DNA of 64,000 nucleotides from NCBI GenBank assembly GCA_964270895.1, contig OZ185446.1. The stretch is one strand, 5' to 3'. The DNA comes from Podarcis filfolensis. Lineage: Eukaryota. A program made the position numbers and the translations under genes. Positions 33,036 through 57,948 of this stretch are shown here, piece by piece. The notes beneath the pieces were generated by a model. That model saw only the letters and a program-made list of their open reading frames with translations, was not told where the DNA came from and searched no databases. Each line of letters begins with the position of its first letter. The stretch's first letter is position 1.

Positions 33036-33174
33036 CTACTGCTGGTTATGTTCAACTTGTTGGTCTTTGCAGTTTTCCTCACAAGCTCCGTCTTTGCTCA
33101 GAGAAGTTTCCTCAGCTTTTTGTTGGGTGGCTTTCTTGAAAATTGCTCTCATGAGAACTGGAATTGACATACAC
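33036..33174 (-). CDS. MED1-like exon 17 (terminal, short)
   Basis: cttctcttag|G CMSIPVLMRAIFKKATQQKAEETSLSKDGACEENCKDQQVEHNQQ-TAG. Confidence 0.88.
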
Positions 33175-35813
33175 CTAAGAGAAGGGCAAAGTCATCCAAT
33201 ATTTAAGGAATTGCTAATTCACTAAATATAATCTGGCTGCTTCATATGCAGAACTAACTGACTGGTGGATAGAACAAGCTGCATTTGCCACTGTCTCCAA
33301 ACAAGTCAGCGCAGTGCAGAAAGCTTTATAGATTACATAAAATAAATTTCTAAAGTTCCATGCCAGTTCTTCTGTAAGGTGACATAAAGGTAAAGGCACC
33401 CCTGACAGTTAAGTCCAGTTGCGAACGTCTCTGGGGTTGCAGCGCTCATCTCACTTTACTGGCCGAGGGGGCCAACGTTTGTCCGCTTCCACAGACAGTT
33501 TTTCTGGGTTGTGGAAATTATGACTAAGCTGCTTCTGGCCAAACCAGAGCAGCGCACAGAAACACTGTTTACCTTCCTGCCAGAGTGGTACCTATTTATC
33601 TACTTGCACTTTGATGTGCTTTCGAACTGCTAGGTTGGCAGGAGCTGAGACTGACAACGGGAGCTCACCCTGTTGTGGGGCCTCAAACCGCCAACGTTCC
33701 AATCTTATTTTGCATTGCTCACTCAACAGGAGCAGTTTGAATCTTTAAAGTTGCATCTCACCACACTGCTGAAAATCCTACTCATGCTCGATGTTTCACA
33801 AGTATTTCCTATCCCTCCACCACCCATTTCTTTCATCAATTTCCTGATCCTTCTAACTTATAATAATAATTTTATTAGTTGTACCCTGCCCATATGACAG
33901 GGTTGCCACAGCCACTCTGGGCAGCTTCCTCCTATAACAACATTGTTTTACTACAATTGTTGTTGTCAACAACAACAACTATCAGCCTTTTAATTTCCTT
34001 CAACACTTCAAGCTCTTTCCCGTCAGAGCAAGGGAGACCTTGCCCACTCCTGAACCTCTCTGTCTTCTGGCCACCTTTACTCTGCATGCAGAGTTGCTAG
34101 TGTTGCCGCTGGTCCAGCCAAAAGGCTATGGCAGGCAGTGATACTGAGGCCTACCTGAAAGTGGTCCAAAGACCACTGCTGAGACTCAGCCCACTGATGC
34201 TTAGACAGTGGTCTAAGCTGCCCATTACAGAAGCAAAGGAACCTCTAGCTGCGCTAACTATTAAAAGATGGAGGAGATTTTTAGTTCCCTTGAGTTCCAG
34301 AGAATTTCACACTGACATACAGTGCTCAACTAACTCTTCTGACCATCTGGAGCTAGACATTTATGGAGCTTGTAGGTAGTTTATTTTGGTTGCCTGTTTC
34401 TCACGTCTTAAGCCTGATGGAGCTATTCCACTGTGTTGTGCTTTCCTATGAAAGCTTACTCAGAAAGCTTACTCAGTATTATTAAGGTCCAGTTCCTCCA
34501 GCAAACTGTCTAAATGCATGCATCATTTGAGAATATCCTTTTTAAGAAAGCTGAATTGGCCTGTGAAACCCACCATTTTTAATAAATTCTTCATTACAAT
34601 GTTTAAGATGGTATTGTTTCTCCTGCCCCAATGTTTATTCAAATACTGAGAAAAATTTCCCGTTACATGAAATATTTTTCAAATCCTTTAAATCACTTAA
34701 AAGTTTCTAGCTGCTGTACAAAGTTATTAAATTTATAGATAGCCACCCATTGGTTTACAAACCATTCCATTATACATGACACAAAAGGAAAAGGGATTGG
34801 AGGGACAAGAAAACTTGGCCCCTATATATTATAGAAGTGTTACGTACCGCTTCAGGACTCTTGTGAGATAATCATTGCTGCAGATTAATGCTCCATCTTC
34901 AGAATGTGTATGAAGAGTGCACATAACGTCCCTTGAACTCAGAACATCGACCATCACTAAACAGAAGAGGGAAAAAATGCTCTAAAAACAAGTGTGACAT
35001 TATAGTAGAGACAACAGTAAGAATTATTAATAACCACCAAATCTAGTCAATCCTTAAATAGAAATTCTTTCTGGTCACTGCATTGGTTTTATTTATTTTC
35101 CTGAAAGCATGCATGCTTCGTGGGAAGAGGTCACATATTCATGCTCATTCCATGCTGACTGTAAAAATGAGCAATTACAAATCACTACAAGATAAAAATA
35201 TATATGTCACCAGTAATTTCAAAAGAAGTTCATTCACACATCTACCTATGAGTAACAGGCATTTGAACTGGCTCCTGTTATCCCATCACCAGCCCAATCC
35301 AAAGACGTGCACATTGGAAGGATTAACAAAACAGTAAACAGGCTGTTCACCTGTTGCAAGTTTATCCCAAGCCATCTTCAAAGCCGGTGTGGTTCAAGTT
35401 TAATCCACAGATTATGTGATAAAGTGCAACATCTGCTTACTTTTTAATATTCCCAACCATAGTATAAAACTGGGAATCAGACCTAATTTATACCTAGGTA
35501 GTCACATCGCAAAATACGCATTTTCACCCTGGGACCATAGGGTGAAAGATGGACTGTAAATGACATAATGTGCTACTTTTTGTACCAATAGCCCCCAAAC
35601 CAATTTAACAGAGAAAAACACAAACACTAGACACACACACACACACACACACACATACTTATTGTGCAATAGTAGAAAAGAGTTTATATAGATGGCCAAG
35701 TAGTAAATGGGAAGAATTTGCCAGTTTCTTCAATGTGTGCTAAAGTAAGAGCCCCTTTGTGTATAACTATAACCATATTGTACATCACCATGAGACACTT
35801 GTGTAGAAGACTA

Positions 35814-35855: not shown

Positions 35856-38800
35856 TGGCAGCCCTGCTTAGGGAAGCTTTTAATGTTTGACGGACTACTG
35901 TATTTTAATATTTTGTTGGAAGCCACCCAGAGAGGCTGGGGAAACCCAGCCAGATGGATGTGGTATAAAAAATAATAAATTTATTAATTATTATTATTAA
36001 TTATTATTATTATTACCACCTCTTTTCAGACCTTATTTATGAATACGTGGCAATAGTCACAGAAGTGATCCAGCTCCTCCTCTCTAGTTCCTTACCTCTG
36101 TGTGTTCAGACTGCATGGGGAGATGGGCAGGTTAGAGGAAGGCAGGAATTGATGAAGCAAAATTTGGGGTGTTGGTTCTAGCAAGGGACTATTTTTGCTC
36201 TACATGAGGCACAAAGTGTCTTGGGCCAGCACTTTTCCCATTAACATCTGAAAGCAGTCACAAGGGCCAGCTATTTAGGGCTTTGCACAGTGCTGCTCTG
36301 GGAAAAGGGAGGTAGTATTTGCGATGAACTGGTTATTGTGTCCATGTGTGGTATGGACATCCAGTCTGTTCTTAACACTGAAACACACATATACACATTC
36401 ACACGTTCTACCCCGGCCTGAGCCAAATGAGGCTACATGTGTAGTGCAAAATGCAGCGAGTGCATTTCTGCACCACGTTCCCTGCTGACTTTTTGTTTGC
36501 CTGTGTGCACCCAATACACCTTTCCTTTGGAGACATACCACAGGCTAGGTTCTCCTCCAATGGATGCTGGAATGTTACTGAAAAGCTAGTGGCTTTTTGC
36601 TGAAAGACGTCAAAATGAAGCAAGTCTGATGAATCTGGAAGGAAATAACTGTTTAGTGACTGTTTGGGCTAACCCTGTAGCAACAGAGCTAAACGTTTAA
36701 TTTGAACTAGAGATATAAATTAGTGGGTGTAGTCAGAAAACATTTGTATTGATTTCCAAGTATTCTATATCCCTTAACTTAAAACATGACCATTGAAGTA
36801 GGAGTGGGTTGGCTTTTGCTAGACTCAAGGAGTCCTGCTTTGTACACGCTCATGAAGTTTCATGGTACAAACACCAAATGAAATACAGTTGCTGAAAATT
36901 TCCTTTTCAGTTTCACTATCTCCAAAAGAAATAAGTTGTAAGGTGTCAACACTGTTTGGCTGGAATCCAAACAGTTCCAAGCACACCTGAAAGCAGGTCC
37001 ACGTGAATACTTCACTCATTTTTAAATCTCTGCCTGCAGCAACTTTTGCTGAGAAGGGAGGGCCGTAGCTCAGTGGCAGAACATGAGTGCCTTGCCTGAG
37101 AAGGTCCCACGTTCCACCCCCGCCATCTCCAGATCTGACTGTGAGAGAACCTCACCTGACACCCTGGAGAACTGATACCAGGGTAGTGTAGTACTGAGCT
37201 ATGTAAGAAAAAGGGGGGGGGGCTGAAAACAGACTATATAGTTTCAAGATGGGAGTTGCAAACGAAACAAAGAAGAAGGGGGAGAACATTGAAGCCAATG
37301 CACATTCGATTTGCGTGATCTGTTCTACGCTATTCATATTGTTGCACCCCACCTTCAATCTCCAAGGTTTCAGGGATTCCAGGTGCTTAAAGAGGGTTTG
37401 TGATTTCTTTTGGGAATGAGGCACAGCGGAGAATGTGATGTCTTTATGATGTATGGTTTATTTACACGTATATACAAACAGCCTACAATGGAGGGGCTCA
37501 CAACATTAGTTTCTCCCACAGCAGCAGCCTTGGATTCAAACAGAAATCAAATATTTCTCTTTGACCCTGTCTCCAGCTTGCTGCTTTTCTTCCTGGTCAC
37601 TTCACTGCTTCTCTCAACTCTGACTTTATCTGTGAGAGGGGGCCCCACCCATTTGCCATCTTGCCCCTTAATCCCCCTTAACGGCTCATCGCTCAGGTTT
37701 ATCACCTCACGAGGAGGCTAGCCTCGCTATTCCTTGGTTAAATTCTAACACTTGCTAGATCCAAGGATTAGAGGGGTCTGGCACCCAGCTTAACCTCCAC
37801 AGATATGATGGGCTCACAATTTTTCCAGCCACTTTCAATGAATTGGATCACAAAAATGCTGAGAGGGGAGTAGAACCATTATGCTGCCCATCACACCTCC
37901 TTATTTCTAATACCTGAATATCTTGTCACCACCATCCAAGGTGGACCTAACTTTACATGCATCCAACATACAAATACAGGTCCCAATTGATATATTTGAG
38001 CTTCACAGCAAATACTGAAGATAAACTCTTCCCAGAATTCACTACTGGAAACACAGCAGAATCAGAAAGAGGTGTGAGCAAAAGATGTGCAAACATCTTA
38101 CCTTCACACTCAGTTGTCTCAGACACGCAGCTGCTAATGAGGGTGTTATATGCTGCTTGACGTCTGAGAACTTCAATCATATCAGGCACACATTTGGGAT
38201 GGGTGAAAGGGATTTTCTTGACCATTGCTCCAGCCATATCAGATTTTTCTATGCCTTTATCTAGGAAATAGCTGTGTTTTGGGCAGCCTGGAAGAGACTG
38301 ATCATAAACCGTACAAGATTTGTTCATGGATGTAGTAGCAATTGTTTCCTGCATTGATTTTTTTAAAAAGTAGTGAATAGGAAACATGAATAAAAGGAAC
38401 TTCCCTTCAAAAACATACCATATTTATTTGAGTCTAATGTACCATCAAATCTAATGCGCACCTCAATTTTCAGAACCCTGAAACCAAAAAAAGTATTTGC
38501 TGGCGAATGTAAATGTGCCATCGAATCTAATGCGTACCTTAATTTTCACAACAATAAGGGTGAGCATTAGATTTGAGTAAATACGATAGTTGTCTAGAAC
38601 AGTACAAAGAATGTGACACTGGACTTTTAAGCAAACCTTGAAATAAGCTGCTTATATTATAGATGCCTTGACCACCCATTTTTAAACAAGTTATTAAATG
38701 GAGTAGTCTCTGCACTGGATCTGAAGAGTTGCTCAGCTCTCAAGCCCAATGGCACCGTGGGGAAAAACCAACCTGTCTGTGTATACATGGTAGTTTAAAG

Positions 38801-41800
38801 TGGATTTTATGCATTTTATGTGTGTTTGTTTTTCACCTTGTCCACACGACATTGCCCTCATCTAAGTAGAAGTCCACACTTCCCTCTGCCATTTAATTCA
38901 GAACTTCCCAATCCATGTGATAATGGGGGGAAATCCAATGTAAACTCAGATGTTACCCAGACACACTGAAGCACATTGTGAGGGCCACTTCTTTTTATGT
39001 GTGTGACAACATTTTGCTGGGTGAACTGCCAACTATTCCTGCACCCCCTACTTTTACTGGTGAGGTTTCCTTGGTGGGCTTTTAGTGGGACTGAGACAGA
39101 GACGCACTTTGGGGGAGGGGGTGAACCCACAAGTGTGGTATATTGGAAAACTTGTATCTCAATAATAATAAATATTGGCCACCCACATAGGTGAACAAAT
39201 CATTGACATGCCCACAGTGGACTTCAGTTTTCCAGAACTCAAGGGGAGGGGTGGGAAAATACTAACTGAGAGGAGGGGACAGCACAGCCCATGAACATAT
39301 CCCATGAAGTGCGGCCCAGAATCATCGAGATGGAGTTCAGCTGAAAGTGCCCATGTATTGATGAATGCACATGGACAGAAGTGCATGTGGACAAATGGTG
39401 TCTGTGTGAGCCATGTGCACATTAACCCTCTGGTCTGTATACCAGTAGTGCCAGTTTCTGCATAGTAGGATTTATCACACACAGCTGTATCAAGGGCAAC
39501 TTGTACCAAAAAGAACTGAATATAAACTAAAAGCATAGCCAAGAAGACATAAGAAATAAATATAATCCACCAACAGGATTCACTCCAGTTGGATCTTTCT
39601 ATCAATTTATTCCCCACAATGAATTCATTCTACGCTACATCTTTATGAAACTTTCCCAGCTATTATGAGACCATGTGTGCAAATGGTTTTAACTTGAAAC
39701 GAGACTTTTAAAAAAGTAGTGTTATGGGTTAATCTAAGGCCGCATTTAGCTTTTTAATGACATCTCATGGATGACAGCCCCACAATTTTGCACATTAGAG
39801 TCACTGAATTGAGTGTAATTTTGTGTGTGAGAGAGGGGGAGAGTAAGGAGAGAGCGCGTGCACACACAATTTGTATATGTTGTGTAAAGGCCAACCTGGG
39901 CAAAGAATTGCAACTGTGACTAGGTCATAGTCAAATTTAGCAGTGTTAAAACAATCTATTCCAGAAAATTCATGACTTCCCAGAATTCAACACACAGCTT
40001 TCAGTAAGCTGTAGAATTATGACTCATTTAGCAGCTTCATTCCTGACCTCATAACAACTGGAGTGAATACCAACAATTGGAGTATAATTACCACAATGAA
40101 GGAAGAAGTACTTGCTATCAAACCATGCGGATGATTTTCTGAAAGGGCAAACTGAACAATCAGCTCATGTAGAGGACCTGGCTTTACTCTAGCAACTGGA
40201 AGCCCTAAAACCAAATTAATTTTTTTCATTAGTACTGTACAAGAGCATCATTAAAGATGGAATGCATTTGAGAGAAACAGCATCACATGAGAAGAGGCAA
40301 AGAGAGACATGATCACACAATGGTTATCAATAAATCAATGGGATGGTTGCCAACAGAGGGACAGGGCTATTCAGATCAGCAAGCACTTGTGCTCCTGAAT
40401 GGGCAAGTTGCTCGTGGGAAGGCTGGGACAAATACCAGCACGAATGCTATACTCCTAGTACAGAAGCAGCAATACTTGGTTCTCATTTTATGCTCCTGCC
40501 GCTTCTCCCTTTCTAACTTAACCCTGGGGCCCCATCAGCCTTCATACCCCTGTAGAAATCACAGGGGAAGAATTAGCCAAATGTTAATTAGGGTCTCTTG
40601 AAATGCTAGCATGTTAGGAGGGAGGGTGGAGGTACAAAATTATGTACTTAATTAAATTAAAACATGCCTGTAAGCTCCTGTAGTTTATGAATACTGGTTG
40701 AAGACAGAGGAAAAGGACAGTTCTGGTAAAACATCAGGAAAAAGCAAGCTGATAATGGTGCAGAAATTACTTCCTTCAGAGGCAGGAATCTGGGGCTGCT
40801 GAAGAAAAGGGTTGAAAGTTAAGCATCAGGTAAAAGGAAGGTAGTTTGACCATTACTCTGGTAGCACAATCTTATAAGTTAAGCCAATGTTTCTCAAGCT
40901 TGCGCCCCCAGGTGTTGTTGGACTACAACTCCCATCAACCCTGACCACTAGTCCTGCTAGCTAGGGATGATGGGCATTGTAGTCCAACAACACCAGGGTA
41001 CCAAAGTCTGAGAAAGGTTATTCCAGGATCTCAGGCAGGATTTTCCTTTATCAGATCCGGAGGATCTGTGGCCCTCCAGATGTTGTTGGACTTCAACTCC
41101 CACCATCCCTGACCATTGACCAGGCTCACAGGGGCTGGTCAGAGCTGGAGACCACCAGCACTGCTCACAGTAGACAGCACCTTCAAAGGGAAACATCAGT
41201 TGGTGAGGAGAGGGGGCAGAATAAGAGTTCAGCCTGGCCTGAATCCAGATCAAAAGCACATACTGGGTCATGGATTGGCAGCTGCCTTTTCTTCAGACTG
41301 AAAATGGCCAGTTTAAGCATGTACTCTTAAGAAGTGTGAAGAACACAATGTGTAATTTGAAGACGCACTTCCAGGTTTTGTACACATTTTCCTACCATGT
41401 TCCTCACAGTGTCTTAAAATGACAGACTATTAAGAAGTGAATTTGATGTGCTATCACACACCCATTATAACCCACAGAGAGCAAGGGATTTCCATGTTCA
41501 GTTATACTGATAGGAGCATGAATGATGCCCTCAAGTCTTACCCATCTCCACCAGTCGGCGAATTCACAAGTGAGGGTGCAAGAGGGAGTCGGTGGACTGC
41601 ATCAGCCCCTCCTATTATGACAAGCACCTTCCTGCCATCTATTTTCAAGCCTGATGGAAAGAGAAGACACAAATATGTCAGACTAGTGAAGATGATACAC
41701 AAATGGCCTTGAGGTCTTTGTCCAGGAACATTGATTTCCCCCAATACTTAAGTGAATTGTGATTCTAAGTACTATAGCCGGTGATGTTATTCTGTCAGAG

Positions 41801-44800
41801 AACAGAAGTTTGCATGATGGATGCCTTGCTTGCCATTTGAACCCATTTTGTCTTTTGTTATTTCAAAGCTAGTTCTGGACTAGTCTGAGGGAAGGCCCTG
41901 TGGCAGTATCTATTTAGGCCCCCTGTGAGTTTCTATGGTGTGGGTCTGGGAAGCCGGCAGCCATTTTAATAATAAAATGGCCGAGATTTTAAGTCCCCAC
42001 AATGCCTTGGATGGATACTATGTGAACCAGCCCAGGGCACTGATGGGAAATTTAATATGGTGGTCCTCTTCCATTTGTTGTTTAAAAACTAAAGTGGGGG
42101 AGCAGGTGGGCCAAGCTGTGGTGGTCAGCTCTGATGGACTCTGCTGAAATGCTAAGCACTGTCTTTAGTCCTCTACCATCATGACTGATTGTTATTGGGG
42201 TTTTTTGACCCAAGCAGATAGCAGGACAAATAAAGCAACAGGCCACCACCAACTCTTAAACTTGTCCATCTTCTCACAAAATGACCACATCCAGACCAGT
42301 GCACTTCATTTTTCTCCTTCATTGTTCCAGTATTTTTCTTCACATACGTGCATTGCAATATTAACACAGTTGTGTGCCATGTAAAAAACATTACATAAGA
42401 CAGTTTCTTTTTTAAAACACCACACATCCCGGAATGGATATTAGAGAAATTTATACCCCGCCCATCTGGCTGGGTTTCTCCAGCCACTCTTGGCGGCTTC
42501 CAACAAAATATTAAAATACAATAGTCTGTCAAACATTAAAAGCTTCCCTAAATAGGGCTGCCTTCAAATGTCTTCTAAAAGTTGTTTTTCTCTTTGACAG
42601 CTGGTGGGAGGGCGTTCCACAAGGCGGGTGCCACTACCAAGAAGGCCCTCTGCCTGGTTCCCTGTAACTTCACTTCTCGCAGGGAGGGAACCGCCAGAAG
42701 GCCCTCAGAGCTGGACCTCAGTGTCCAGGCAGAATGATGGGGGTAGAGACCCTCCTTCAGGTATACTGGGTCGAGGCCGTTTAGGGCTTTAAAGATCAGC
42801 ACCAACACTTTGAATTGTGCTTGGAAACGTACTGGGAGCCAATGTAGGTCTTTCAAGACCGGTGTTATGTGCTCTCGGCAGCCGCTTCCAGTCACCAGCC
42901 TAGCTGCCGCATTCTGTATTAGTTGTAGTTTCTGGGTCACCTTCAAAGGTAGTCCCACGTAGAGTACATTGCAGTAGTCCAAGCAGGAGATAACTAGAGC
43001 ATGCACCACTCTGGCGAGACAGTCTGCGGACAGGGAAGGTCTCAGCCTGCGTACCAGATGGAGCTATGGGTAGCTTCCACTAAAAGAAGCTAGCAATATT
43101 ATCAAGCTGTCAACTTGAATACATGTATCAATACACTTGAATGCCTGTAGCAATACAGAATGAAGGCTAAGGTTAAGGTTAAGGGTCCAGAAGTGACAGC
43201 AGTGGGATTAGACAGAGATTTCTGCTCCAATCACACAAAAGCTTGTGGCTGTGGGTGTGCATGCGTCCATACCTCAGTGCTTTGCATGCAGGAGGTTTCA
43301 GGTTCAGTCCCCCAAACCTCCAGGTAAAGGATTTTAGGTGGCAGAGATGGGAAAATCTCGACTTTACACCCTTCAGAGAGCCGCTAGCATAACCATGCAA
43401 TCCTGTCCATGTCCCATTTCAGTGGGGCGTCATCATACACAAGTAGGGATAGAATTGGTCTTCGTTTACTCACTCAAAATGAAGCATGTGTCATTTAGTG
43501 AGTGTAGAATCTATTTTAAAAGGGAATGCAGAATGAGACCACCACTATGGAGGTTTTCTAGTCGATTCACAATCCCTCACTCATCACTAATAATAATATT
43601 TTTGTGGGACCTTTTATTTTTTATAGATGTATTTTATTGGTTTGTTTACTGTAATGGGTTTTAGTGTTTATACTGTGTTGTAAGCCACTTTGAGGGATGG
43701 TGGGTGGCGCTGTGGGTAAAAGCCTCAGCGCCTAGGGCTTGCCGATCGAAAGGTCGGCGGTTCGAATCCCCGCGGCGGGGTGCGCTCCCATCGTTCGGTC
43801 CCAGCGCCTGTCAACCTAGCAGTTCGAAAGCACCCCCGGGTGCAAGTAGATAAATAGGGACCGCTTACTGGCGGGAAGGTAAACGGCGTTTCCGTGTGTT
43901 GCGCTGGCTCGCCAGATGCAGCTTTGTCACGCTGGCCACATGACCCTGAAGTGTCTCCGGACAGCGCTGGCCCCGGCCTCTTAAGTGAGATGGGCGCACA
44001 ACCCTAGAATCTGTCAAGACTGGCCCGTACGGGCAGCGGTACCTTTACCTTTAAGCCACTTTGAGTCACTTTTGCGAGTAAACTGACAAAATAGTAATTA
44101 ACTCACCTGGGGTGAGTTGTTCCTCTAGAATTTGATACGGCGATAGATAAAATTCAAGGTTCATAGGGCTTCCTATAGAATTTTAGAAAATGAGATGGAT
44201 TAAACAGAAAAAGCACATAACGGATAGTAAGGTAAGCTATGTAAGCCTAGGATGTTTGATCCCCTTCATCGTTTTTGTTTGCTTCCAATGCAAAGGACTC
44301 AATACCCCAGGGCCATATTGTGCGACAGGGGACCCAGACAACTGTTTGGGGTTGCAAGGAGATTGTTGTGGAGAGCTAGCTATCACCTCAACAGTTTAAA
44401 CATATAAAACAAGTAAGTTCCTTTGTATAAATCACAGAATTGTAGCATTGGAATGGACCACTTGGGTCATCTAGTCCAACTCCCTTTAATGCAGGAATCT
44501 AATCTAGATTCCTTAGATTAAGAATCTAATCTAATGCTCTACCAACTAAGCTATCACTCCTAGGATGAAATTTCTTCCTGATAAATCATGCATACAATTC
44601 ATGCACAAATATTGAGGAGCAAGCTGCAGGACACCCTAAAATAAAGTACAGTGGTACCTCGTGTTAAGAACTGAAGTTGTTCTGGAGGTCCGTTCTTAAC
44701 CTGAAACTGTTCTTAACCTGAGGTACCACTTTAGCTAATGGGGCCTCCCGTTGCCGCCACACGATTTCTGTTCTCATCCTGAAGCAAAGTTCTTAACCTG

Positions 44801-47800: not shown

Positions 47801-49264
47801 AGGAACAAAGTGATGAGGACTAAATATCGACAGAGTGGCTAGAGAAACCCAGCCAGATGAGCCATGTTATGTACTGAAGTTCTCACCCTGGGCCAGCAGG
47901 GGGATACTGTAGATAGTTCAGGTCCACATATGCAAATAAGGGATTGAAAGTGACATTCAGTGATTGGCTAGTTACAGAAAATGGTTACTGCTGCGTTCTA
48001 GTGGAGCTTTATATAAGCAGGCTGGCTGAACCCTTCAGTTCAGTTCTGTTCTGGGTCTGTGAATAAAGAAGAGCTGTTTGAAGAATCGCTGTGTCGTCTG
48101 ATATGTACACCCACAACTTAACAGGTCAGGTATAAATTACTACTACTTCTACTACTACTACTACCATCTGTTGCTGCTGCCCCTGTGGATCCTGCCACCT
48201 GAGGCAGGATGCCTCACTTGCTGCACGGATGGGCTGACCCCGAATGCAAACTTTTTTCTTCATTGTGGTTGATGTATACGGGTTCTACAGAAAGGAGTGT
48301 TTGCACCCAGCTTTCCAAATGGCTGTGTTTCAGTTCCTGAATAAACGTCAGCAGCAGCAGCAGGTCTGTACATCAGTGGAAGACCACATGCTTTGGACTG
48401 AACCCCCCACCCCACCCCAGGTTCAGCTTCCAACATCTCCAGGGCTGGGAAAGGCAGATGCTGCAAGGCAACTCAGAGATCAAAATACTAATAGCTGGAT
48501 TTGGCATAAAGCAACTTCCTACTCCTGCATTTTCTGAAATGCCACTTTGTAGTGGAATTTATCTACGCTTTGTCAAGAGGCTGAGGTGAAGTAGTAATCA
48601 TTTCACAGGCCCAAGTATGGGAAATGTCCCAAAACATTCTGCCCGAGGGGAACTCCTGAACTGCTCATGCTCATCTCTTTCAAGGATATCACAGGAAAAT
48701 GGCAGTAAGCTGCAGCTTAGAGGATGCATTAGCCACTGAATACACCGAATGGCATGTACGCATGTCATGTGAAAATTATACAGCCATAGAAACATACCTA
48801 GCAGTCCCACTGCTGCGGGAAGTGAAGAGAGCGTATTTAGTAGATGCAGAGTATACTTACCCCTTTCGATTTGACAAAAGTGACAGCTTGTTCATTGTTG
48901 CAGCCAAAGGTCCTGCTGCACACATGAAAAAATAGGGAATAAGGTTCCATCACACAGAATCAATGTGTTCAATAAAAGCAGTCAACAGATCCCATACATT
49001 TAAGAGCAAAAGACCAAAGATTCTTGCTTAATTGTGCTATATTGCTCATCGTACCTTTTGTAAAAGGAAGGCATCTAGAACCCAAAAACACATTCGTTGC
49101 ACAAGATGACAAGACAGAAGCTAGACATCATTTCCATCAAACATAACAGAAAATTAGGCAATCCTAGAGTTGATTACCGTGCAAGGTTCTTTGTATTTTC
49201 TCAAGGCAAATAGATATGGGAGACTCTGATGTCTTACTCGAAGTCCAAGAATGTTTGTCCTCAC

Positions 49265-49325
<61 letters not shown>

Positions 49326-52300
49326 TTGTATCATATAATCACATGCACATGCATCATATAATCACATGCAAGTCAGAAAATTGGCTGGTATGTTCAAAGC
49401 AAAATAGGGAATTCAGCACTCTCAGTCAGGCCTCCTATATCTTGACCTTCATTGCCCCCTTTGGGGTGCCAGATCACAATGCTGCAGCAGCAGTGGAAGC
49501 TACAACTGGCAGAAGACATCCCCCCCACCAGGCTTTATAACAGACCAAGTAACCCCACATCCCAGTATCAGCTGGGGGTGGATTGGAAAAAAGATAAAAT
49601 CAAATGGGGAAAATTTGCCTATTCAATTTTTCAATCCGTAAGGGATTGATTAGCTTTGCAATTACAAAGCATTACAACACTGCCATTTTTATTTTCCATT
49701 CTGACCATGGAATTTGCATCACTCTCCCAATACCACACACAAACTGTCCATTTAATTGCATTTAGTTTCATCCTCGATAATCACAATCAATCAGTATTTT
49801 TGGGAAGTTAAGAATCCCCTCCATTATTCCCACCTAGAGCCATCTTGCCAAAGTTCCCCCTTCAGAGTTATCCATCCAAGTTCAAAGTGGAGATGACAGG
49901 GCAGTAAAATAGCAACCTCACATGTTAAACTTTGGCCCGTCAGGCAGAAAATAAGATGGAAGACCTATACACACAATGACTCACTTTCCCTTCTACTTCC
50001 AATTATTCTCCTCAAGAAAGCATAAAAAAAAAGTTTCTCCCACATTACTCCTCCCCAACAGAACTGATTTCATTACAATTCTTACCATGGAGAGACGAAC
50101 CAGTTCCATAGTTTCACTCCACGGCTTCTGTGAGAATTTTAGACGTAGCTTTTCCATTATGTCATTTGCAGACCCAGATTTCGCAGGATCTGGAAGAAGT
50201 TAAGAGTTTAATTAGCTGAGGGTGTGGAAAACCTTTTTCAGTTCAAGGGCCACAGTTCCTTGCTTGAAGCCTCCTGGGGGCCATGGGCCAGAAGCAAAAG
50301 AGGGTGGAGGAAGAAATGGGAGTAGGCTGGTGTCTTCACCTTCCCTAGATCCCTCTTCATCTTCCATGGAAGCCAGAAGCTTTCTCACAGTTGAAGGAAG
50401 CATTCCACTCAGCAAAACCCTCCAACGGGCTGGGCAAAGGGTGTAGTTTGGGAGGCTGTCTGGCTTAGGGAGATTTGAGGGCCAGATGAGAGGCTCAAGG
50501 TCCCATTTGGTCCCTGGGCTCAAGGTTCCCCACCCCTGATATAGCAAAACAGCCAACTATTACATGACTTCAATGAACAGCCCACACTGCAACAATAGTC
50601 ACTTTAAATTAGGACTATTTAGTCCCAGATGGGTGAGATATTTCAGATTAACTGGCTCATGAACTTGGCTACAATATAGGTACTAATATTAATGGACCTG
50701 TGTTTGGCTTAAATCCCACTCTTCCACCTGTTGAATGTCATAATCTGAAACCCACAACTATTTTAAAAGTTCAGTTTTATATCTTAAGTGTCTTTGACAT
50801 TAAATCAAGATACACACCCACACCCCCCCATATATCATTCTATTTTTTTTTAAAAGATTTTTATTAAAGTTTTACAAAAAAGAAAAATAGAAATTCACAG
50901 AATAAAAAACCATAAATTACAGAAAAAAGAAACACACAAAAGAGAAAAAAAAGAAAAAAATACAGAAAGAAAAACACAACTAATTAAGAAAAATTACATT
51001 TGAACAAAGAAAAAATAAAACCATTCCATTTTTCCAATAACCTCAATTTCATATGCTTATGTTCTTGACCTCCTCGCACCTTCCCCTTTTTGTATTCCCA
51101 TTCAAATATTTAATTCAGCAAATTCTTACCCTTTATCAAATGTTTAAACTTTGTGCCATAACATATACTATATCCCTATTTTTCAACCAATTATCAATAC
51201 CTTTTTTGCATAATCTTAATAACTTTTATCACTAATTACCACTTATTGCCCATCCAAGCACATTTTTAACACTCATTAATTTTATAATATTTCTGAAGAT
51301 AGTCTTTGAATTTCTTCCAGTCTTCTTCCACCAACTCTTCTCCCAGGTCTCGGATTCTGTCAGTCATTTCCGCCAATTCCATATAGTCTATCAGCTTCAT
51401 CTGCCATTCTTCCAGGGTGGGTAGCTCTTGTGTCTTCCAATACTTTGCGATGAGAATTCTTGCTGCTGTTGTTGCGTACATAAAGAAATTTCTATCTTTC
51501 TTTGGCACCAGTTGGCCCACCATGCCCAAGAGAAAGGCCTCTGGCTTCTTAAGGAATGTATATCTAAAGATTTTTTTCATTTCGTTATATATCATCTCCC
51601 AGAAAGCCTTAATCTTTGGGCATGTCCACCAAAGGTGAAAGAATGTTCCTTCACTTTCTTTACACTTCCAACATTTATTGTCAGGCAAATGGTAGATTTT
51701 TGCAAGCTTGACTGGTGTCATGTACCACCTGTATATCATTTTCATAATATTCTCTCTTAGGGCATTACATGCCGTAAATTTCATACCTGTGGTCCACAAC
51801 CGTTCCCAGTCAGCAAACATGATGTTATGACCAACATCTTGTGCCCATTTAATCATAGCAGATTTAACTGTTTCATCCTGCGTATTCCATTTTAGCAGCA
51901 AGTTATACATTCTTGAAAGTATTTTAGTTTTGGGTTCTAACAACTCAGTTTCCAATTTTGATTTTTCCACCTGGAAACCTATTTTTTTATCCATGTTATA
52001 GGCTTCTCTTATTTGAAAATAGTGCAGCCAATCTCGCACCTTATCTTTTAATTTCTCAAAACTCTGCAATTTCAATTTATCTCCTTCTTGTTCCAGTATT
52101 TCCCAATATTTCGGCCATTTGGCCTCCATATTGGACTTTTTAAGTGCCTTTGCCTCCATTGGTGACAACCACCTTGGGGTTTTGTTCTCCAGTAAGTCTT
52201 TATATCTTAACCAGACGTTAAACAATGCTTTCCTGACAATATGATTTTTAAATGCTTTATGAGCTTTGACCTTGTCATACCACAGATATGCATGCCACCC

Positions 52301-55300: not shown

Positions 55301-57948
55301 TCCGTAGTTAGTTCTCAAATCCAAAAGGTGTTTCGGAATATCTTTAAAAATCTCCGCTCTGGTCTCATTAATCTCTAGGGTCTTCTGGAAGTGAGCACTC
55401 AATATTTTGTCTCGTTCCTCTTTCGATCGGAGGGTCACCAAACAGTCTCTCACCCTGTTTTTCCTCCCTCCTCTTCCAAGTCTGAAGGCGCTCACTATCT
55501 TGAAATCTTTATCCAGCTCCAAGTTCCAGAATTTCTGAAATTCCTGTGAAAGATAGTCATTCAAATTGTCTCTCTCAAGTTCTGGCACCGCCCTGATCCT
55601 CAGGTTTGTCTGTCTCTCTCTCAATTCAACCATAGACAATAAGGCCTGGTGGTCCCCAATCTGTTTACGTATTGGTTTGATTTCTTCCTCCACAGCCACA
55701 GCTTTTTCTTTTGCCTCCTCGGCTATTTTCCTAGTAGTCGCAGATTCCTCCAACAGTTTTTCTATAGCTTTGGTATTTGAGTTAATACTGGCTGTGTTCC
55801 CTTTAATTTCAGCTGACTGATCTGAGACCTGTTTACTTAGGCCTTCCAATTTTTCGTAGATTTTATTCAACACAGATGTAAATTCCCCTTCTGAGGCCAT
55901 TCCTTTTGGCTCAATTTGCCCTGGGTCTTCCTCCTGAGGTTCAGGGAGGCCAGGCACAGATGCCCTACGTTGCTGGGAGATTGAAGTAGATTGTTGGACT
56001 TTGACCTTGGATCTTGTTGCTCTTTGGTCAGTCATTCCCCTTTATCTTCAGTCAAGGTCAATTCCCACAGGCAAGCCTTGTAGTGGAAAGTCCCCAAAGT
56101 TAACAGTGGAAAATTCCTCCAGTCAAGTATTAACTTCAATAGTCCTCTAGGGGGACACAGTGGCTACCATAAAATTCTCAATAGCCAGACAAATAAGTCT
56201 TTTTGTAGCTTTCCGTGTCCCCTCTTTAATTGAAACTAAGTATTCAGATCAGTAAAACTCAGAAATGTATCTTCTTGCAGAGTTAGATCAAATATTTACT
56301 GTATCCACAGTCAATGCGAGCTCAAATGTAGCAAACCTCGTTAATCTGACAGACCGTTCCCATGAGAGTTCAAATAAAAAGTCTTTTTAAATTCCCAGAA
56401 GATCCCCAGAAGAAATACAGTCACTTTCTCAACTTCCCCTACAGGGGAGTTCTCTCTTTTGGTGCTTAGAGTTAAAGTTGAACGATCCACATTAAAGTAA
56501 TAGCGCAAAAAGGTCTTTGCTTTGATCTTTTACAAAGCGGAAAGGCGGACTTCCTGTTTACACCTTTCCGCTTCGGAGCCCAAATTCAATCCTTTTTGTT
56601 CTCAAATCCAAATTTCTTAAGTCCCCCTACTCACGGGTGTTCTCTTTTAGAGCCGAATTTCACAGGAAAAAGGTCAGCGCTCTCCGGCAACAGCTACGCG
56701 GCTTCGCTCTGTAGACGCAGCAATCGACCCGTAGCACCGCGCCGCTCCCGCTGCACACCGGAACCCCTTTCGGGGCTCCCTCGCAAAAACGGGGGGCGCA
56801 AAAGGTGCCTGCTGGGTCCCACGCTCGCAGGCTCTTTCTGCCTGCGATTTCAGATCGGGTCCCCGCTTCGCCGTAGCGGAACAGACCCACTTTCTACAGG
56901 GCTTCTCCTCCTACTCAGAAGGAGACCGCCATTGCCGTTGGCACCGCCTCCGGAAGTTCCCATATATCATTCTAAGGAAGCAATCCTACTCTTACCTGAG
57001 AGAAAATCCTATTGAGCTCATTGAGAATTGTCTCAGGCACCATTTTAAAACAAATACAATTTAAGTAGCACAAAGCATTTTTTCTAGCCTAAAGGTTTAA
57101 AGTTTCTGTAAGACAATCCATTCAACACCCACTTTTTGGAACTCTCTGCCTGGTAAAATTAGGTACTTTCCACTGTATTGCTTTTGGTGTTTGCAATAAT
57201 TTTTATTTTTGCAAGCCAACTGAGGCATGTAACTTTAACATGTGATTCCATTATGCACAATTGTTTTTAAAATGCTAGTTTCATATTCAGGTAGCTTGTT
57301 TTTAATGTTTAGTCCCATTGGTATTTTATAATTAATATTTGAGAGGTCTTCTGTTGAGTACGTGGTATGTGGTTTTTGTATGTTTGTTAAATACATCAAA
57401 TGGCCATAAAGCCTATATTGGACACCTGATTTCTCCTTTGTGTTATGCTACACATCAACATCATTTGCTTCACTTAGTTTCCCTATACTGCAGGTAACAG
57501 CACAGTCTATGGAGTCCAGAAATGGCAAAGTCTCTGTCCTCAGGCAGGTAACTCTAGACATTTAATTGGCTAAGGTGCAGGAGAAGATTGCTTGCCTGCC
57601 TTGCACATACAGAAACAGACTGGGCTGGTATTTGACTTACTGCAATAGGAGTAATGGGATGGAGTCCTCAGCCTCACCCAAGGGCAGCAGGGTCATTGTG
57701 GGGGTAAAGGACAGGTCTTGGGGCAGACATAACTCTATCTTACCAGAGCCAGGGACCTCAGGGGCAAACAACCAGCAGCTTCTACGGCCTGAGACAGTAG
57801 CCTTGCTCAACCTATAACATCCTCTCTGTGGTGACAATACAGCATAGTGGTGTAATCCAGCCACACCTTCCACATTAGCACCTGCCTGGAAACCCAGATC
57901 CTAAGCGGCTGCAAATACAACAGCCTAATTAGCAACTTACTTACCCAT
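33036..57948 (-). CDS. MED1-like gene: divergent paralogue of Mediator subunit 1, N-terminal structured region only, ~527 aa, 17 coding exons
   Basis: join(57948-57945, 50189-50086, 49259-49178, 48915-48861, 47634-47502, 46638-46610, 46264-46193, 46105-46031, 45890-45820, 44172-44107, 41650-41542, 40798-40668, 40204-40092, 38297-38102, 36634-36539, 34956-34848, 33174-33036) = 1584 nt. All phases are consistent with no internal stop. MED1 hallmarks: KFSQKPWSET, CYITS..FYIE, GYLNPRSGG, ACFFL, RQAAYNTLISSCV, FSVTFQHP, RCMSIPVLMRAI. Exon 1 is the least certain. Confidence 0.9.
33386..33703 (-). mobile_element. Sauria SINE (5' part degraded)
   Basis: aaaggtaaagg tail plus gtttaccttcc...cctatttatctacttgcac...ttcgaactgctaggttggcag body, reverse of the 43694 copy. 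Confidence 0.8.
34848..34956 (-). CDS. MED1-like exon 16
   Basis: 109 nt; (V)MVDVLSSRDVMCTLHTHSEDGALICSNDYLTRVLK(R). Confidence 0.9.
35815..36015. mobile_element. L2 3'-end fragment(s) with (AAT)n and (ATT)n microsatellites at both ends
   Basis: ttgttggaagccacccagagaggctggggaaacccagccagatgg...tataaa is the L2 3' motif also at ~27305-27372, 42448-42510 and 47832-47864. Confidence 0.65.
36539..36634 (-). CDS. MED1-like exon 15
   Basis: 96 nt; (D)SSDLLHFDVFQQKATSFSVTFQHPLEENLAC(V). Confidence 0.92.
37056..37200 (+). mobile_element. tRNA-derived squamate SINE
   Basis: ggccgtagctcagtggcaga A-box head and degenerate B box, followed by non-tRNA body. Confidence 0.55.
38102..38297 (-). CDS. MED1-like exon 14
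   Basis: 196 nt; SLPGCPKHSYFLDKGIEKSDMAGAMVKKIPFTHPKCVPDMIEVLRRQAAYNTLISSCVSETTECE. Confidence 0.93.
38418..38586. mobile_element. Tc2-like (CCGTA-terminus) MITE, degenerate
   Basis: TA-ccatatttatttgagtctaatg...cattagatttgagtaaatacga-TA imperfect TIRs. Confidence 0.6.
40092..40204 (-). CDS. MED1-like exon 13
   Basis: 113 nt; (G)LPVARVKPGPLHELIVQFALSENHPHGLIASTSSFIV. Confidence 0.85.
40668..40798 (-). CDS. MED1-like exon 12 (NAGNAG acceptor, GC donor)
   Basis: 131 nt; (G)SPRFLPLKEVISAPLSACFFLMFYQNCPFPLSSTSIHKLQELT(G)|GCATGT. Confidence 0.85.
40882..41140. mobile_element. Two adjacent degenerate hAT-like MITE fragments
   Basis: Repeated tgttgttggac(t/ta)caactccca(t/c)ca motif, related to 23097-23292. 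Confidence 0.5.
41542..41650 (-). CDS. MED1-like exon 11
   Basis: 109 nt; (G)LKIDGRKVLVIIGGADAVHRLPLAPSLVNSPTGGD(G). Confidence 0.87.
42448..43065 (-). mobile_element. 5'-truncated L2-clade LINE fragment
   Basis: ORF VHALVISCLDYCNVLYVGLPLK...LIQNAAARLVT...LHWLPV...FKVLVLIFKAL plus L2 3' end. Confidence 0.88.
43694..44051 (+). mobile_element. Full-length, young Sauria SINE
   Basis: tRNA head (tggcgctgtgg A box, ggttcgaatccc B box), CpG-rich body, acctttacct tail; 13-bp TSD TAAGCCACTTTGA at 43681-43693 and 44052-44064. Confidence 0.93.
44107..44172 (-). CDS. MED1-like exon 10
   Basis: 66 nt; (G)SPMNLEFYLSPYQILEEQLTP(G)|gtgagt. Confidence 0.88.
44649..44879. mobile_element. pogo/Tigger-like MITE
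   Basis: CAGTGGTACCTC...GAGGTACCACTG TIRs. Confidence 0.8.
45410..45645. mobile_element. pogo/Tigger-like MITE
   Basis: agtgggaacctcgggttacg...cgtaaccggaggtaccactg-TA. Confidence 0.75.
45820..45890 (-). CDS. MED1-like exon 9
   Basis: 71 nt; (R)TPGMDRVTEILCGKVGYLNPRSG(G); the phase-compatible acceptor has a weak pyrimidine tract. Confidence 0.85.
46031..46105 (-). CDS. MED1-like exon 8
   Basis: 75 nt; (S)ETKSKVFAAFLALEKDLCSLSALS(R). Confidence 0.9.
46193..46264 (-). CDS. MED1-like exon 7
   Basis: 72 nt; (R)MENFDAFGNMLADMLNIYQIPGS(S). Confidence 0.9.
46610..46638 (-). CDS. MED1-like exon 6 (29-nt microexon)
   Basis: ttcatcttctag|TCEDLLQLL(R)|gtacat; bridges phase 0 to phase 2 exactly. Confidence 0.85.
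46880..46941 (+). mobile_element. CR1 LINE 3' end
   Basis: ggtcccttccaactcc...attctatgattctatg octamer tail. Confidence 0.7.
47502..47634 (-). CDS. MED1-like exon 5
   Basis: 133 nt; (G)LNYYVSPSGAVCYITSKSFYIEIHLEKDGKVVDVRLAHPGKKPL. Confidence 0.93.
47865..48123 (+). mobile_element. Solo LTR (259 bp) nested in an L2 3' tail
   Basis: TGTTA...TAACA termini, TATA-like tttatataag (~48008), AATAAA (48062-48067); diverged 5-bp flanks agcca/ggtca. Confidence 0.65.
48861..48915 (-). CDS. MED1-like exon 4
   Basis: 55 nt; (A)GPLAATMNKLSLLSNRK(G)|gtaagt. Confidence 0.88.
49178..49259 (-). CDS. MED1-like exon 3 (GAG acceptor)
   Basis: 82 nt; DKHSWTSSKTSESPISICLEKIQRTLH(A)|gtaatc; acceptor (TC)n-tttctcggtGAG|. 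Confidence 0.8.
49271..49320. repeat. (AG)25 microsatellite, the polypyrimidine tract of MED1-like exon 3
   Basis: Perfect dinucleotide run 11 nt upstream of the acceptor on the minus strand. Confidence 0.95.
50086..50189 (-). CDS. MED1-like exon 2
   Basis: 104 nt; (D)PAKSGSANDIMEKLRLKFSQKPWSETMELVRLSM|gtaag. Confidence 0.92.
50218..50538. mobile_element. Degenerate hAT-like MITE
   Basis: Imperfect TIRs gagggtgtggaaaacctt / aaggttccccacccctg. Confidence 0.55.
51266..55000 (-). CDS. L1 ORF2p: APE endonuclease, reverse transcriptase, Cys-rich domain (1244 aa)
   Basis: SWNIHG, LQETH, GDMNG, RIDQIW, SDHN; YRPISLLNVDYKI, QGCPISPLLF, FADD; CWKC...HLWWTC. Confidence 0.97.
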   Translation of the reverse strand: MSLQLLSWNIHGFNSLEKRRKVFHILKKDQLDLICLQETHVVRLHRKVLINKRLGQEFISSDKVKKRGVVIYAKESLSPKFVFKDEQGRFIAIEIQLQGEKYLILGVYAPNEGKSEFFKKLHETLLDYMDYNIILMGDMNGVVSTNMDKSQRQVVTKDGRLPKTFFELTDNMDLIDTWRTKNPLGREGTFFSEANMTWTRIDQIWITRGLAPKIRKVEICPKTCSDHNAIKMEMKLMPIGSFRWRMNDALFRNQEVIKKAQKTLRDYFEINLNTTVEKRTVWDAGKAVMRGFLIQQNAIKKRTQNEKKDKILEKIKGEKRLRAKPKSQEILREIKLYQVQYMRMINQEVEWKIKQMRQKSFESANKCGKLLAWQMKKRQKLNTITNLEVNGKIIQNPLEIRNCFQRFFKQLYTQGPQKEVELDQFLRKNGLQKISQEKRIMLSDKITEQEVEGAIRNMQLGKSPGPDGLTSKYYRVLKDWLIRPLMEVCNEILEGKKAPESWQEAYITLIPKTESEKTQLKNYRPISLLNVDYKIFADILANRLKKVLLEEIHKDQAGFLPGRHLSDNTRNIINILEKLQVNINTKAVLIFIDAEKAFDNISWSFMKKNLQGMGVGQGFENGISAIYSEQKAKLIVNNMVTEGFKIEKGTRQGCPISPLLFITVLEVLLNMIRRDRLIKGIQVGAKQYKLKAFADDLVLTLQEPESSSKRVLEVIQEFGQMAGFKLNKSKTKVLEKNLTPIEKDRFQKETGLTIVKKVKYLGVNMTAKNLNLFKDNYEKCWLEVKKDLEIWSNLKLSLLGRIVAIKMNVLPRMLFLFQSLQIVDKMDCFKKWQKDISRFVWQGKKPRIKFKILTDVRERGGFALPDLKLYYESAAFCWLKEWLLLENTDILDLEGFNNVFGWHAYLWYDKVKAHKAFKNHIVRKALFNVWLRYKDLLENKTPRWLSPMEAKALKKSNMEAKWPKYWEILEQEGDKLKLQSFEKLKDKVRDWLHYFQIREAYNMDKKIGFQVEKSKLETELLEPKTKILSRMYNLLLKWNTQDETVKSAMIKWAQDVGHNIMFADWERLWTTGMKFTACNALRENIMKMIYRWYMTPVKLAKIYHLPDNKCWKCKESEGTFFHLWWTCPKIKAFWEMIYNEMKKIFRYTFLKKPEAFLLGMVGQLVPKKDRNFFMYATTAARILIAKYWKTQELPTLEEWQMKLIDYMELAEMTDRIRDLGEELVEEDWKKFKDYLQKYYKINEC
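55013..56035 (-). CDS. L1 ORF1p: coiled coil, RRM, CTD (340 aa)
   Basis: Heptad-rich N-terminal half, then RQTNLRIRAVPE, FRLGR, IFKDI...RTNY, FRWEFPQGLSF motifs, immediately upstream of ORF2. Confidence 0.93.
   Translation of the reverse strand: MTDQRATRSKVKVQQSTSISQQRRASVPGLPEPQEEDPGQIEPKGMASEGEFTSVLNKIYEKLEGLSKQVSDQSAEIKGNTASINSNTKAIEKLLEESATTRKIAEEAKEKAVAVEEEIKPIRKQIGDHQALLSMVELRERQTNLRIRAVPELERDNLNDYLSQEFQKFWNLELDKDFKIVSAFRLGRGGRKNRVRDCLVTLRSKEERDKILSAHFQKTLEINETRAEIFKDIPKHLLDLRTNYGDLVALLRKNTIVFRWEFPQGLSFTFKGKKFRIRSVEDKEKFLRDFEEDLQKEATDLPKALRPGAGTAPPPLEFDKSKKKIPPQELDELLGAAGGN
57945..57948 (-). CDS. MED1-like exon 1, coding part (ATG G); the exon may extend to an acceptor at 58044
   Basis: gaaATGG|GTAAGT: good Kozak context, perfect donor, phase 1 matching exon 2, in-frame TAA shortly upstream. 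Confidence 0.6.

What the first reader, a model, noticed from the sequence alone, without database searches (positions are those of the whole stretch)
33036..57948. Hidden intact 17-exon MED1 paralogue: a second Mediator subunit 1 gene
Seen in sequence: 17 small minus-strand exons, mostly missed by the ORF track, join with consistent phases into a 1584-nt ORF (~527 aa) with no stops. Established: the peptides align in order with the structured N-terminal region of Mediator subunit MED1 (for example KFSQKPWSET, GYLNPRSGG, RQAAYNTLISSCV and RCMSIPVLMRAI against MED1 KFNQNRPWSET, GYLTPRSGG, HQVAYNTLIGSCV and RCMSIPVTMRAI). Intron positions follow MED1 as I recall them, including a 29-nt microexon. 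It is far too diverged to be the highly conserved orthologue. Inference: a functional paralogue, probably absent from the mammalian locus, implying a variant Mediator complex in reptiles. Automated pipelines may already label it MED1-like, but I know of no functional description.
Basis: partly seen in the sequence, partly recalled or inferred. Interest (0 to 1): 0.93.

Follow-up and report, generated by a model that had tools for sequence, protein, structure and literature searches.

The report
Short MED1-like Mediator subunit gene
This lizard window holds an intact 17-exon copy of the ancient "short" paralogue of Mediator subunit MED1, which databases already label MED1-like from sharks to birds; it lacks MED1's hormone-receptor-binding tail and nobody has tested what it does.

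Summary
Seventeen minus-strand exons (57948..33036) join into a 1584-nt, 527-aa open frame. That includes the 29-nt microexon and one conserved GC-AG intron.

It is a MED1 paralogue, not the orthologue. It is 38-40% identical to canonical MED1. It falls in a well-supported "short Med1" clade that is sister to canonical MED1. Its downstream neighbour is YAE1, not CDK12.

It is neither hidden nor reptile-specific. NCBI already names it "MED1-like" in lizards, turtles, birds, amphibians, ray-finned fishes and elephant shark; the coelacanth entry carries the plain MED1 name. Bourbon 2008 predicted a small Med1 in frogs and fish. No mammalian member turned up.

The gene is under moderate purifying selection (dN/dS 0.28 against Lacerta agilis). 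All 13 invariant family residues are kept. A model of an orthologue matches the human MED1 chain in solved Mediator. Every short form examined lacks both LxxLL receptor boxes and the long disordered tail.

Transcription was not shown. RNA contigs laid on exons 3-10 hit only intronic repeats. RNA-labelled contig sets hold the last exon and 3'UTR, but their strand is unknown.

The most likely role (inferred) is to fill MED1's slot in Mediator as a natural tail-less form. Earlier notes of this scan on the same window made related points.

The parts
57945..57948 (-). Exon 1, coding part: ATG plus G, donor GTAAGT. The 5'UTR extends upstream and its start is unknown.
   Evidence: It gives MDPAK..., matching the MDPVK... 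start of the Hemicordylus orthologue P0273.
50086..50189 (-). Exon 2 (104 nt), holds KFSQKPWSET
49178..49259 (-). Exon 3 (82 nt); a CT-rich microsatellite just upstream lies where the polypyrimidine tract would be
48861..48915 (-). Exon 4 (55 nt)
   Evidence: canonical skink MED1 has the same 55-nt exon
47502..47634 (-). Exon 5 (133 nt), hits Pfam Med1
   Evidence: conserved in Lacerta agilis
46610..46638 (-). Exon 6, the 29-nt microexon
   Evidence: It is 100% identical in Lacerta. A 29-nt exon sits at the same place in gecko and hummingbird MED1-like and in skink canonical MED1.
46193..46264 (-). Exon 7 (72 nt)
46031..46105 (-). Exon 8 (75 nt)
45820..45890 (-). Exon 9 (71 nt), holds GYLNPRSGG
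44107..44172 (-). Exon 10 (66 nt)
41542..41650 (-). Exon 11 (109 nt)
40668..40798 (-). Exon 12 (131 nt), followed by a GC donor
   Evidence: the GC donor is conserved in Lacerta agilis
40092..40204 (-). Exon 13 (113 nt)
   Evidence: the Podarcis lilfordi protein P0001 starts in this exon
38102..38297 (-). Exon 14 (196 nt), holds RQAAYNTLISSCV; hits Pfam Med1
36539..36634 (-). Exon 15 (96 nt)
34848..34956 (-). Exon 16 (109 nt)
33036..33174 (-). Exon 17, coding part (139 nt with the TAG): RCMSIPVLMRAI plus a 34-residue tail. The 3'UTR continues downstream, with polyA signals at 32866 and 32754.
   Evidence: Podarcis lilfordi and Lacerta agilis use the same stop

Best explanation
This is the lacertid orthologue of the gnathostome 'short Med1' gene, which databases call MED1-like. 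It is the sister paralogue of canonical MED1.

Shown:
- It is an intact 17-exon gene of 527 codons.
- It keeps MED1's intron architecture and the whole structured N-terminal Med1 fold.
- The protein ends 46 residues from the start of the RCMSIP motif.
- It therefore has neither the two LxxLL nuclear-receptor boxes nor the roughly 1000-residue disordered tail.
- It has evolved about five times faster than MED1, but under purifying selection (dN/dS about 0.3).

Inferred mechanism, about even odds: the protein docks into the MED1 position of the Mediator middle module. That would give a Mediator population with no MED1 tail, a natural counterpart of the laboratory truncation MED1(1-530). Such a Mediator could not be recruited by liganded nuclear receptors through NR boxes and would lack the disordered tail. 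In cells that express it, it would shift the balance between tail-dependent and tail-independent transcription. The CpG-poor sequence around exon 1 and the near absence of exon coverage in the RNA sets examined fit restricted or low expression.
For: Gene model.

Med1 family: Pfam PF10744 on two exons. Human and mouse MED1 chains match at E about 1e-9. An AlphaFold model of the 64%-identical orthologue P0273 (pLDDT 81, pTM 0.77) matches MED1 chain 7emf_A with E 9.5e-43, TM 0.74/0.82 and 36% identity.

Paralogy: in the maximum-likelihood tree the short clade has support 99/98, the canonical clade 100/99, and the two together 98/93, with cyclostomes and invertebrates outside. The order inside the short clade follows the species tree.

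Both genes in one species: Nanorana, Anguilla, Terrapene and Varanus.

Synteny: a gene with a Yae1_N domain lies convergently 2-3 kb downstream in Lacerta, gecko, ostrich and hummingbird. The window is colinear with it. Skink canonical MED1 instead sits head-to-head with a 1485-aa kinase.

Constraint:
- Against Lacerta agilis, exons 5-17 have no indel, the same splice sites and the same stop.
- 49 of 1338 nt and 23 of 446 aa differ there.
- dN is 0.024, dS 0.086 and omega 0.28, with binomial P = 1.2e-5 against neutrality. Flanking introns are about 84-92% identical.
- Omega is 0.25-0.38 against gecko and hummingbird.
- All 13 invariant and 51 of 58 near-invariant family residues are kept.

Tail: canonical MED1 of fish, frog and skink has LTSLL and LMNLL boxes after RCMSIP. 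In the 17 short forms where that motif could be located, none has an LxxLL after it; their tails are 46-498 aa.

Precedent: MED1(1-530), which lacks the NR boxes, rescues some MED1 functions and not others (PMC8091968).
Against: No transcript evidence for this species. Four RNA contig sets laid on exons 3-10 gave depth only on intronic repeats, at most trace depth in the bins holding exons 8-9, and no exon-exon joint among the 15 joints listed (43 further joints were not shown).

RNA-labelled sets from three studies hold 56-76% of the words of the last exon plus 3'UTR. Contigs have no strand, and the convergent YAE1 3'UTR could account for this.

Lacertid annotations contain only fragments of 168-301 aa, as expected if RNA support is poor.

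Omega near 0.3 and the fast rate show relaxed constraint.

Binding to Mediator was not tested. A full-length L1 lies in the sense orientation in intron 1.
Confidence: 0.8

Rival explanations
1. The gene is real and conserved, but its product does not enter Mediator. It could work as a free decoy that titrates MED1-binding partners, or have a role unrelated to Mediator.
For: It evolves about five times faster than MED1 (branch lengths). Identity to MED1 is only 38-40%. The N-terminal 70 residues are poorly predicted and the most diverged.
Against: The whole MED1 fold seen in solved Mediator is retained. Residues invariant across MED1 and MED1-like from invertebrates to vertebrates are all kept. 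Keeping such a large docking fold for roughly 450 million years is most simply explained by the same docking site.
Confidence: 0.12
2. In lacertids the gene is silent or decaying: the frame is still open but the gene is no longer used.
For: Exon coverage was near zero in the RNA sets laid. Only fragmentary gene models exist in Podarcis lilfordi and Lacerta agilis. The promoter region is CpG-poor. A sense L1 lies in intron 1. The lacertid end branch is longer than that of Hemicordylus (0.40 against 0.25).
Against: All 17 exons are open and all splice sites intact. Omega is 0.28 with P about 1e-5 against neutrality on the Podarcis-Lacerta comparison, which measures recent evolution. Exons are about three times less diverged than introns. 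The invariant residues are kept.
Confidence: 0.06
3. It is the only MED1 gene of this genome, a fast-evolving orthologue.
For: Canonical MED1 of this very genome was not retrieved here.
Against: The tree places it inside the short clade, away from squamate canonical MED1, which is 93-95% identical among squamates and a turtle. Its neighbour is YAE1, not CDK12. Varanus has both genes. An earlier, unchecked scan note reports a MED1 exon on another piece of this genome.
Confidence: 0.02

Closest known systems
Vertebrate 'MED1-like' / small Med1 (NCBI automatic name; 'small form' of Med1 in frogs and fish, Bourbon 2008, PMC2475620)
   Same: Same clade in the tree. Same exon sizes, including the 29-nt microexon, in gecko and hummingbird. 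Same convergent YAE1 neighbour. Same short tail without NR boxes. It is 97.5% identical to the Podarcis lilfordi fragment P0152 and 64% to Hemicordylus P0273.
   Different: Nothing essential. At 46 residues from the RCMSIP motif, the tail here is the shortest of those measured (46-498 aa; the gecko tail carries a long tandem repeat). The lacertid database models are fragments, so the full 527-aa model may not yet be annotated.
Canonical MED1 (TRAP220/PBP), Mediator middle-module subunit
   Same: Pfam Med1 domain. Same fold as chain A of 7emf. The same intron positions and phases for the ten consecutive introns compared. Conserved motifs such as AYNTLI.SCV and RCMSIP.
   Different: Only 38-40% identical. 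No LTSLL or LMNLL NR boxes and no long disordered tail. No long minus-strand ORF lies downstream in 33 kb. The locus differs: YAE1 here, CDK12 for MED1. The amino-acid rate is about five times faster.
Engineered MED1(1-530) truncation (Ge 2008 and Ito 2021, as described in PMC8091968)
   Same: The same portion of the protein: the N-terminal structured domain without NR boxes or disordered tail. In the paper it supports adipogenesis driven by ectopic PPARgamma2 but not normal 3T3-L1 adipogenesis.
   Different: That is a laboratory construct of mammalian MED1. This is a separate natural gene with its own long history. Whether it behaves the same way is inference.
C. elegans MDT-1.2 ('MED1L', small Med1 form; PMC4344494, PMC2475620)
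   Same: A second, short Med1 paralogue beside a long one.
   Different: It arose by an independent duplication in nematodes. In the tree here the vertebrate short clade arises within vertebrates, after the split from amphioxus and the protostomes.

Membership tests
Med1 family (Pfam PF10744) | Significant match to the Med1 profile | tested here: met
   Exon 14 scores 41.1 bits and exon 5 scores 32.3 bits, against a cut-off of 25. All full-length orthologues carry PF10744 in the precomputed annotation.
Med1 family (Pfam PF10744) | Fold of the MED1 N-terminal domain as seen in solved Mediator | tested here: met
   The model of orthologue P0273 (64% identical to the window protein) matches 7emf_A with E 9.5e-43 and TM 0.74/0.82.
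Med1 family (Pfam PF10744) | Physical subunit of the Mediator middle module | not testable with these tools
   Needs co-purification or a multimer model.
Canonical vertebrate MED1 (TRAP220) | Two LxxLL NR boxes after the structured domain | tested here: not met
   There is no LxxLL after RCMSIP here or in the 16 other short forms where that motif could be located. LTSLL and LMNLL are present in canonical MED1 of fish, frog and skink.
Canonical vertebrate MED1 (TRAP220) | Large terminal exon encoding a disordered tail of about 1000 residues | tested here: not met
   The stop is at 33036. No minus-strand ORF longer than 245 aa lies in 1..33100, and none there resembles a serine-rich MED1 tail.
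Canonical vertebrate MED1 (TRAP220) | Orthologous locus next to CDK12 | tested here: not met
   The neighbour is YAE1. Skink canonical MED1 is head-to-head with a 1485-aa kinase.
Gnathostome short Med1 (MED1-like) clade | Groups with the short forms in a tree that includes canonical MED1 and outgroups | tested here: met
   Short clade support 99/98. The window is sister to Hemicordylus (100/98) within squamates (100/100).
Gnathostome short Med1 (MED1-like) clade | Conserved convergent YAE1 neighbour | tested here: met
   Found in Lacerta, gecko, ostrich and hummingbird. Window 28.1-31.45 kb is colinear with the Lacerta Yae1_N gene.
Gnathostome short Med1 (MED1-like) clade | Shared exon architecture | tested here: met
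   The gecko exons are 104, 79, 55, 133, 29, 72, 75, 71, 66, 109, 125, 110, 196, 96 and 109 nt, and the hummingbird exons are nearly the same.

The most novel reading that the evidence does not exclude
Non-mammalian jawed vertebrates keep two interchangeable occupants of the MED1 slot. The short one would make a Mediator that cannot be recruited through NR boxes and lacks the MED1 disordered tail. It would act as a built-in, perhaps tissue- or stage-restricted, antagonist or alternative to MED1-dependent transcription, and mammals would have lost this switch.
Probability: 0.3. Interest if true: 0.6.

Novelty: already known. Interest (0 to 1): 0.35.

Why it matters
MED1's tail is central to current ideas on nuclear-receptor coactivation and on condensates at super-enhancers. 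A natural, long-conserved MED1 paralogue without that tail exists in chicken, Xenopus and zebrafish-type models. It offers a ready genetic test of what the MED1 core does on its own, and of whether Mediator composition is switched in vivo. The gene itself is not a discovery: it is annotated widely and was noted in 2008. What remains open is its function, its expression pattern and why no mammalian copy is seen.

Tried and rejected
1. RNA junction test. I laid four RNA contig sets (X1, X2, X10, X13) on 43400-49399. The search that chose them was driven by intronic repeats, so the result says little, and the single read-laying run is now spent.

2. Terminal exon search. A second run search with the last exon plus 3'UTR found RNA-labelled sets holding 56-76% of its words. 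I could not lay them, so strand and splicing remain unknown.

3. Lacertid transcript contigs. I looked for transcript-derived protein fragments with P0152 as query. Only genome-derived models came back.

4. Locus look-ups. Look-ups for P0273 and P0152 found no record, because they are not the longest isoforms.

5. Exon threading. Exact threading failed for the ostrich and skink models. I mapped the skink gene with a Varanus guide instead.

6. Codon model. The IQ-TREE omega line was not captured, so I report the pairwise Nei-Gojobori values.

7. Neighbouring exons. Pfam and the protein atlas gave nothing for the two YAE1 exons tried (28459-28629 and 30750-31145). I identified the neighbour through colinearity with the Lacerta Yae1_N gene.

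8. Other checks. Rfam found nothing in the window. Earlier-findings look-ups for CDK13, RALA and YAE1 were blank.

9. Rejected readings. The sole-orthologue and pseudogene readings are rejected for the reasons given under rival explanations. The LxxLL at residue 131 (LLQLL, in the microexon) lies inside the fold and is not conserved across the clade, so I do not read it as an NR box.

Full report
**What is there**

I rebuilt the gene with orthologue proteins as guides and a search for phase-compatible splice sites.

- The result is 17 exons from the ATG at 57948 to the TAG at 33038-33036. The CDS is 1584 nt, 527 codons, with no internal stop.
- Exon 1 contributes only ATG plus G.
- The 29-nt microexon is at 46638-46610, with a good acceptor and donor.
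- Fifteen introns are GT-AG. Intron 12 is GC-AG, and the same GC is present in Lacerta agilis.
- No long minus-strand ORF follows in the 33 kb downstream, so the gene has no equivalent of MED1's large terminal exon.

**Family**

- Two single exons pass Pfam Med1's gathering score.
- Exon 14 matches human and mouse MED1 residues 365-448 in the PDB.
- An AlphaFold model of the 64%-identical Hemicordylus orthologue has pLDDT 81. It matches MED1 chain A of the human Mediator structure 7emf over the whole modelled chain: E 9.5e-43, TM 0.74/0.82, 36% identity.
- The window protein keeps all 13 residues that are invariant in an alignment of 39 MED1 and MED1-like proteins from invertebrates to mammals. 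It also keeps 51 of 58 near-invariant residues.

**Orthologue or paralogue**

The protein is 38-40% identical to canonical MED1 N-terminal regions. By contrast, canonical MED1 is 93-95% identical among squamates and a turtle, and 85% identical to mammals.

An exhaustive profile-free search with one exon returned a set of proteins of 500-1000 aa. Their source names are mostly 'mediator of RNA polymerase II transcription subunit 1-like'. They come from:
- lizards (Podarcis lilfordi, Lacerta agilis, Hemicordylus, Heteronotia, Varanus), turtles and essentially all bird orders;
- salamanders, frogs and a caecilian;
- coelacanth, gar, sturgeon, bichir and teleosts;
- elephant shark.

A maximum-likelihood tree of 42 sequences gives a short clade (99/98) and a canonical clade (100/99). 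The two are sisters (98/93), with lampreys, hagfish, amphioxus and protostomes outside. Branching inside the short clade follows the species tree.

Nanorana, Anguilla, Terrapene and Varanus each have one gene of each kind. The duplication is therefore ancient, at or before the base of jawed vertebrates. The window holds the short copy.

Summed branch lengths from the duplication node are about 1.7 for the window protein and about 0.35 for squamate canonical MED1. That is roughly a five-fold faster rate.

**Locus**

A gene with a Yae1_N domain lies convergently 2-3 kb beyond the stop in Lacerta, gecko, ostrich and hummingbird. Window 28.1-31.45 kb is colinear with the Lacerta copy at 87-92% identity. 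That places YAE1 at 28459-31145 on the plus strand.

Skink canonical MED1 instead lies head-to-head with a 1485-aa protein kinase, as MED1 does with CDK12.

From memory of the human map, YAE1 lies near RALA and CDK13 on 7p14. That would make MED1-like/CDK13 the ohnologue counterpart of MED1/CDK12. I could not test this link here.

**Gene architecture**

- Gecko and hummingbird MED1-like genes have almost the same exon sizes as the window gene, including the 29-nt microexon.
- Skink canonical MED1 has internal exons of 55, 133, 29, 72 and 75 nt, and the same phases over ten consecutive introns.

**Constraint**

- Exons 5-17 were recovered from Lacerta agilis with no indel, identical splice sites and the same stop.
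- 49 of 1338 nt and 23 of 446 residues differ.
- dN is 0.024, dS 0.086 and omega 0.28, with binomial P = 1.2e-5 against neutrality.
- The surrounding introns are about 84-92% identical.
- Pairwise omega against gecko and hummingbird is 0.25-0.38, though dS is near saturation there.
- Selection is therefore purifying but clearly weaker than on MED1.

**Tail**

Canonical MED1 of loach, eel, frog and skink carries LTSLL and LMNLL about 105 and 146 residues after the RCMSIP motif. In the 17 short forms where that motif could be located, none has an LxxLL after it. Their tails run from 46 residues (this gene) to 498 residues (gecko, with a tandem repeat).

**Expression**

This is the weak point.

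- The run search on 43400-49399 picked RNA contig sets that share only intronic repeats. When laid, they gave depth on those repeats and at most trace depth in the two bins that hold exons 8-9. None of the 15 joints listed was an exon-exon joint; 43 more were not shown.
- A second search with the last exon plus 3'UTR found twelve RNA-labelled sets of a close relative, from three studies, holding 56-76% of the words. That is as much as that species' DNA runs hold.
- One of those sets (X8) held only 6% of the intron-rich stretch, which argues against DNA contamination.
- Contigs carry no strand, however. The convergent YAE1 has plus-strand polyA signals at 32079, 32715 and 32975, so its 3'UTR could explain this signal.
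- The sequence around exon 1 is CpG-poor, with observed/expected 0.07.

**Mechanism**

What is shown: a complete MED1 docking fold, under selection, without the receptor-binding boxes and without the disordered tail.

What is inferred: the protein takes MED1's place in the middle module and yields tail-less Mediator. The laboratory truncation MED1(1-530) gives a precedent. According to PMC8091968 it supports adipogenesis driven by ectopic PPARgamma2 but not normal 3T3-L1 adipogenesis. I put about even odds on slot competition. A free-decoy or unrelated role is the main alternative.

**Novelty**

[quoted passage not shown] Automatic pipelines label the gene MED1-like in hundreds of genomes. Text searches found no functional study.

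The existence of the gene is therefore known. The lacertid models in the databases are only fragments of 168-301 aa, so the full 527-aa model given here is at most a small annotation gain.

Earlier notes of this scan on the same window made related points, and I tested some of them:
- s1-320506 (the protein ends where the NR boxes begin): confirmed.
- s1-320529 (synteny and an ohnologue origin): partly confirmed.
- s1-320571 (L1 in intron 1): open frames and domains confirmed.
- s1-329781 reports a MED1 exon on another piece of the same genome. That would be the canonical gene. I could not check it.

Noticed in passing
window 51266-56035 (minus), with a CpG-rich 5' end at about 56500-57000: A full-length LINE-1 with both frames open sits in intron 1 in the same orientation as the gene. 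ORF1 is 340 aa. ORF2 is 1244 aa and carries endonuclease and reverse-transcriptase domains. The CpG-rich stretch (GC 0.54, observed/expected 1.0) lies at its 5' end. An earlier scan note (s1-320571) already reports it.
   Followed up: partly
window 28459-31145 (plus): The YAE1 orthologue lies convergent to the MED1-like gene, with about 1.9 kb between the two stop codons. Its first exon starts MSWVQAA. Plus-strand polyA signals at 32079, 32715 and 32975 mean the two 3'UTRs may overlap.
   Followed up: partly
window 21500-23300: A GC-rich block (63% GC over 22-24 kb) with long ORFs on both strands and no Pfam match. It is probably a CpG-island promoter or first exon of an unidentified gene upstream of YAE1.
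   Followed up: no
window 8003-8887 (plus) and 5465-6202 (minus): A Tc1/mariner (Sleeping Beauty-type) transposase ORF of 294 aa with HTH and DDE_3 domains, and a 245-aa reverse-transcriptase fragment.
   Followed up: no
window 49260-49335 (minus): A (CT)n microsatellite lies directly upstream of the exon 3 acceptor, where the polypyrimidine tract would be. Changes in its length might affect splicing.
   Followed up: no
L001 42326-43820 (gecko Heteronotia binoei MED1-like, last exon): The gecko orthologue has a 498-residue tail made of about 20 tandem copies of a 19-residue acidic, serine-rich unit (…LPPLEPLDDRSEANSS…). This is a lineage-specific low-complexity tail on an otherwise tail-less family.
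   Followed up: no
window 60000-61000: A moderately CpG-rich stretch (GC 0.53, observed/expected 0.55) lies 2-3 kb upstream of exon 1. It could be an upstream non-coding exon or promoter of this gene, or of a divergent neighbour.
   Followed up: no
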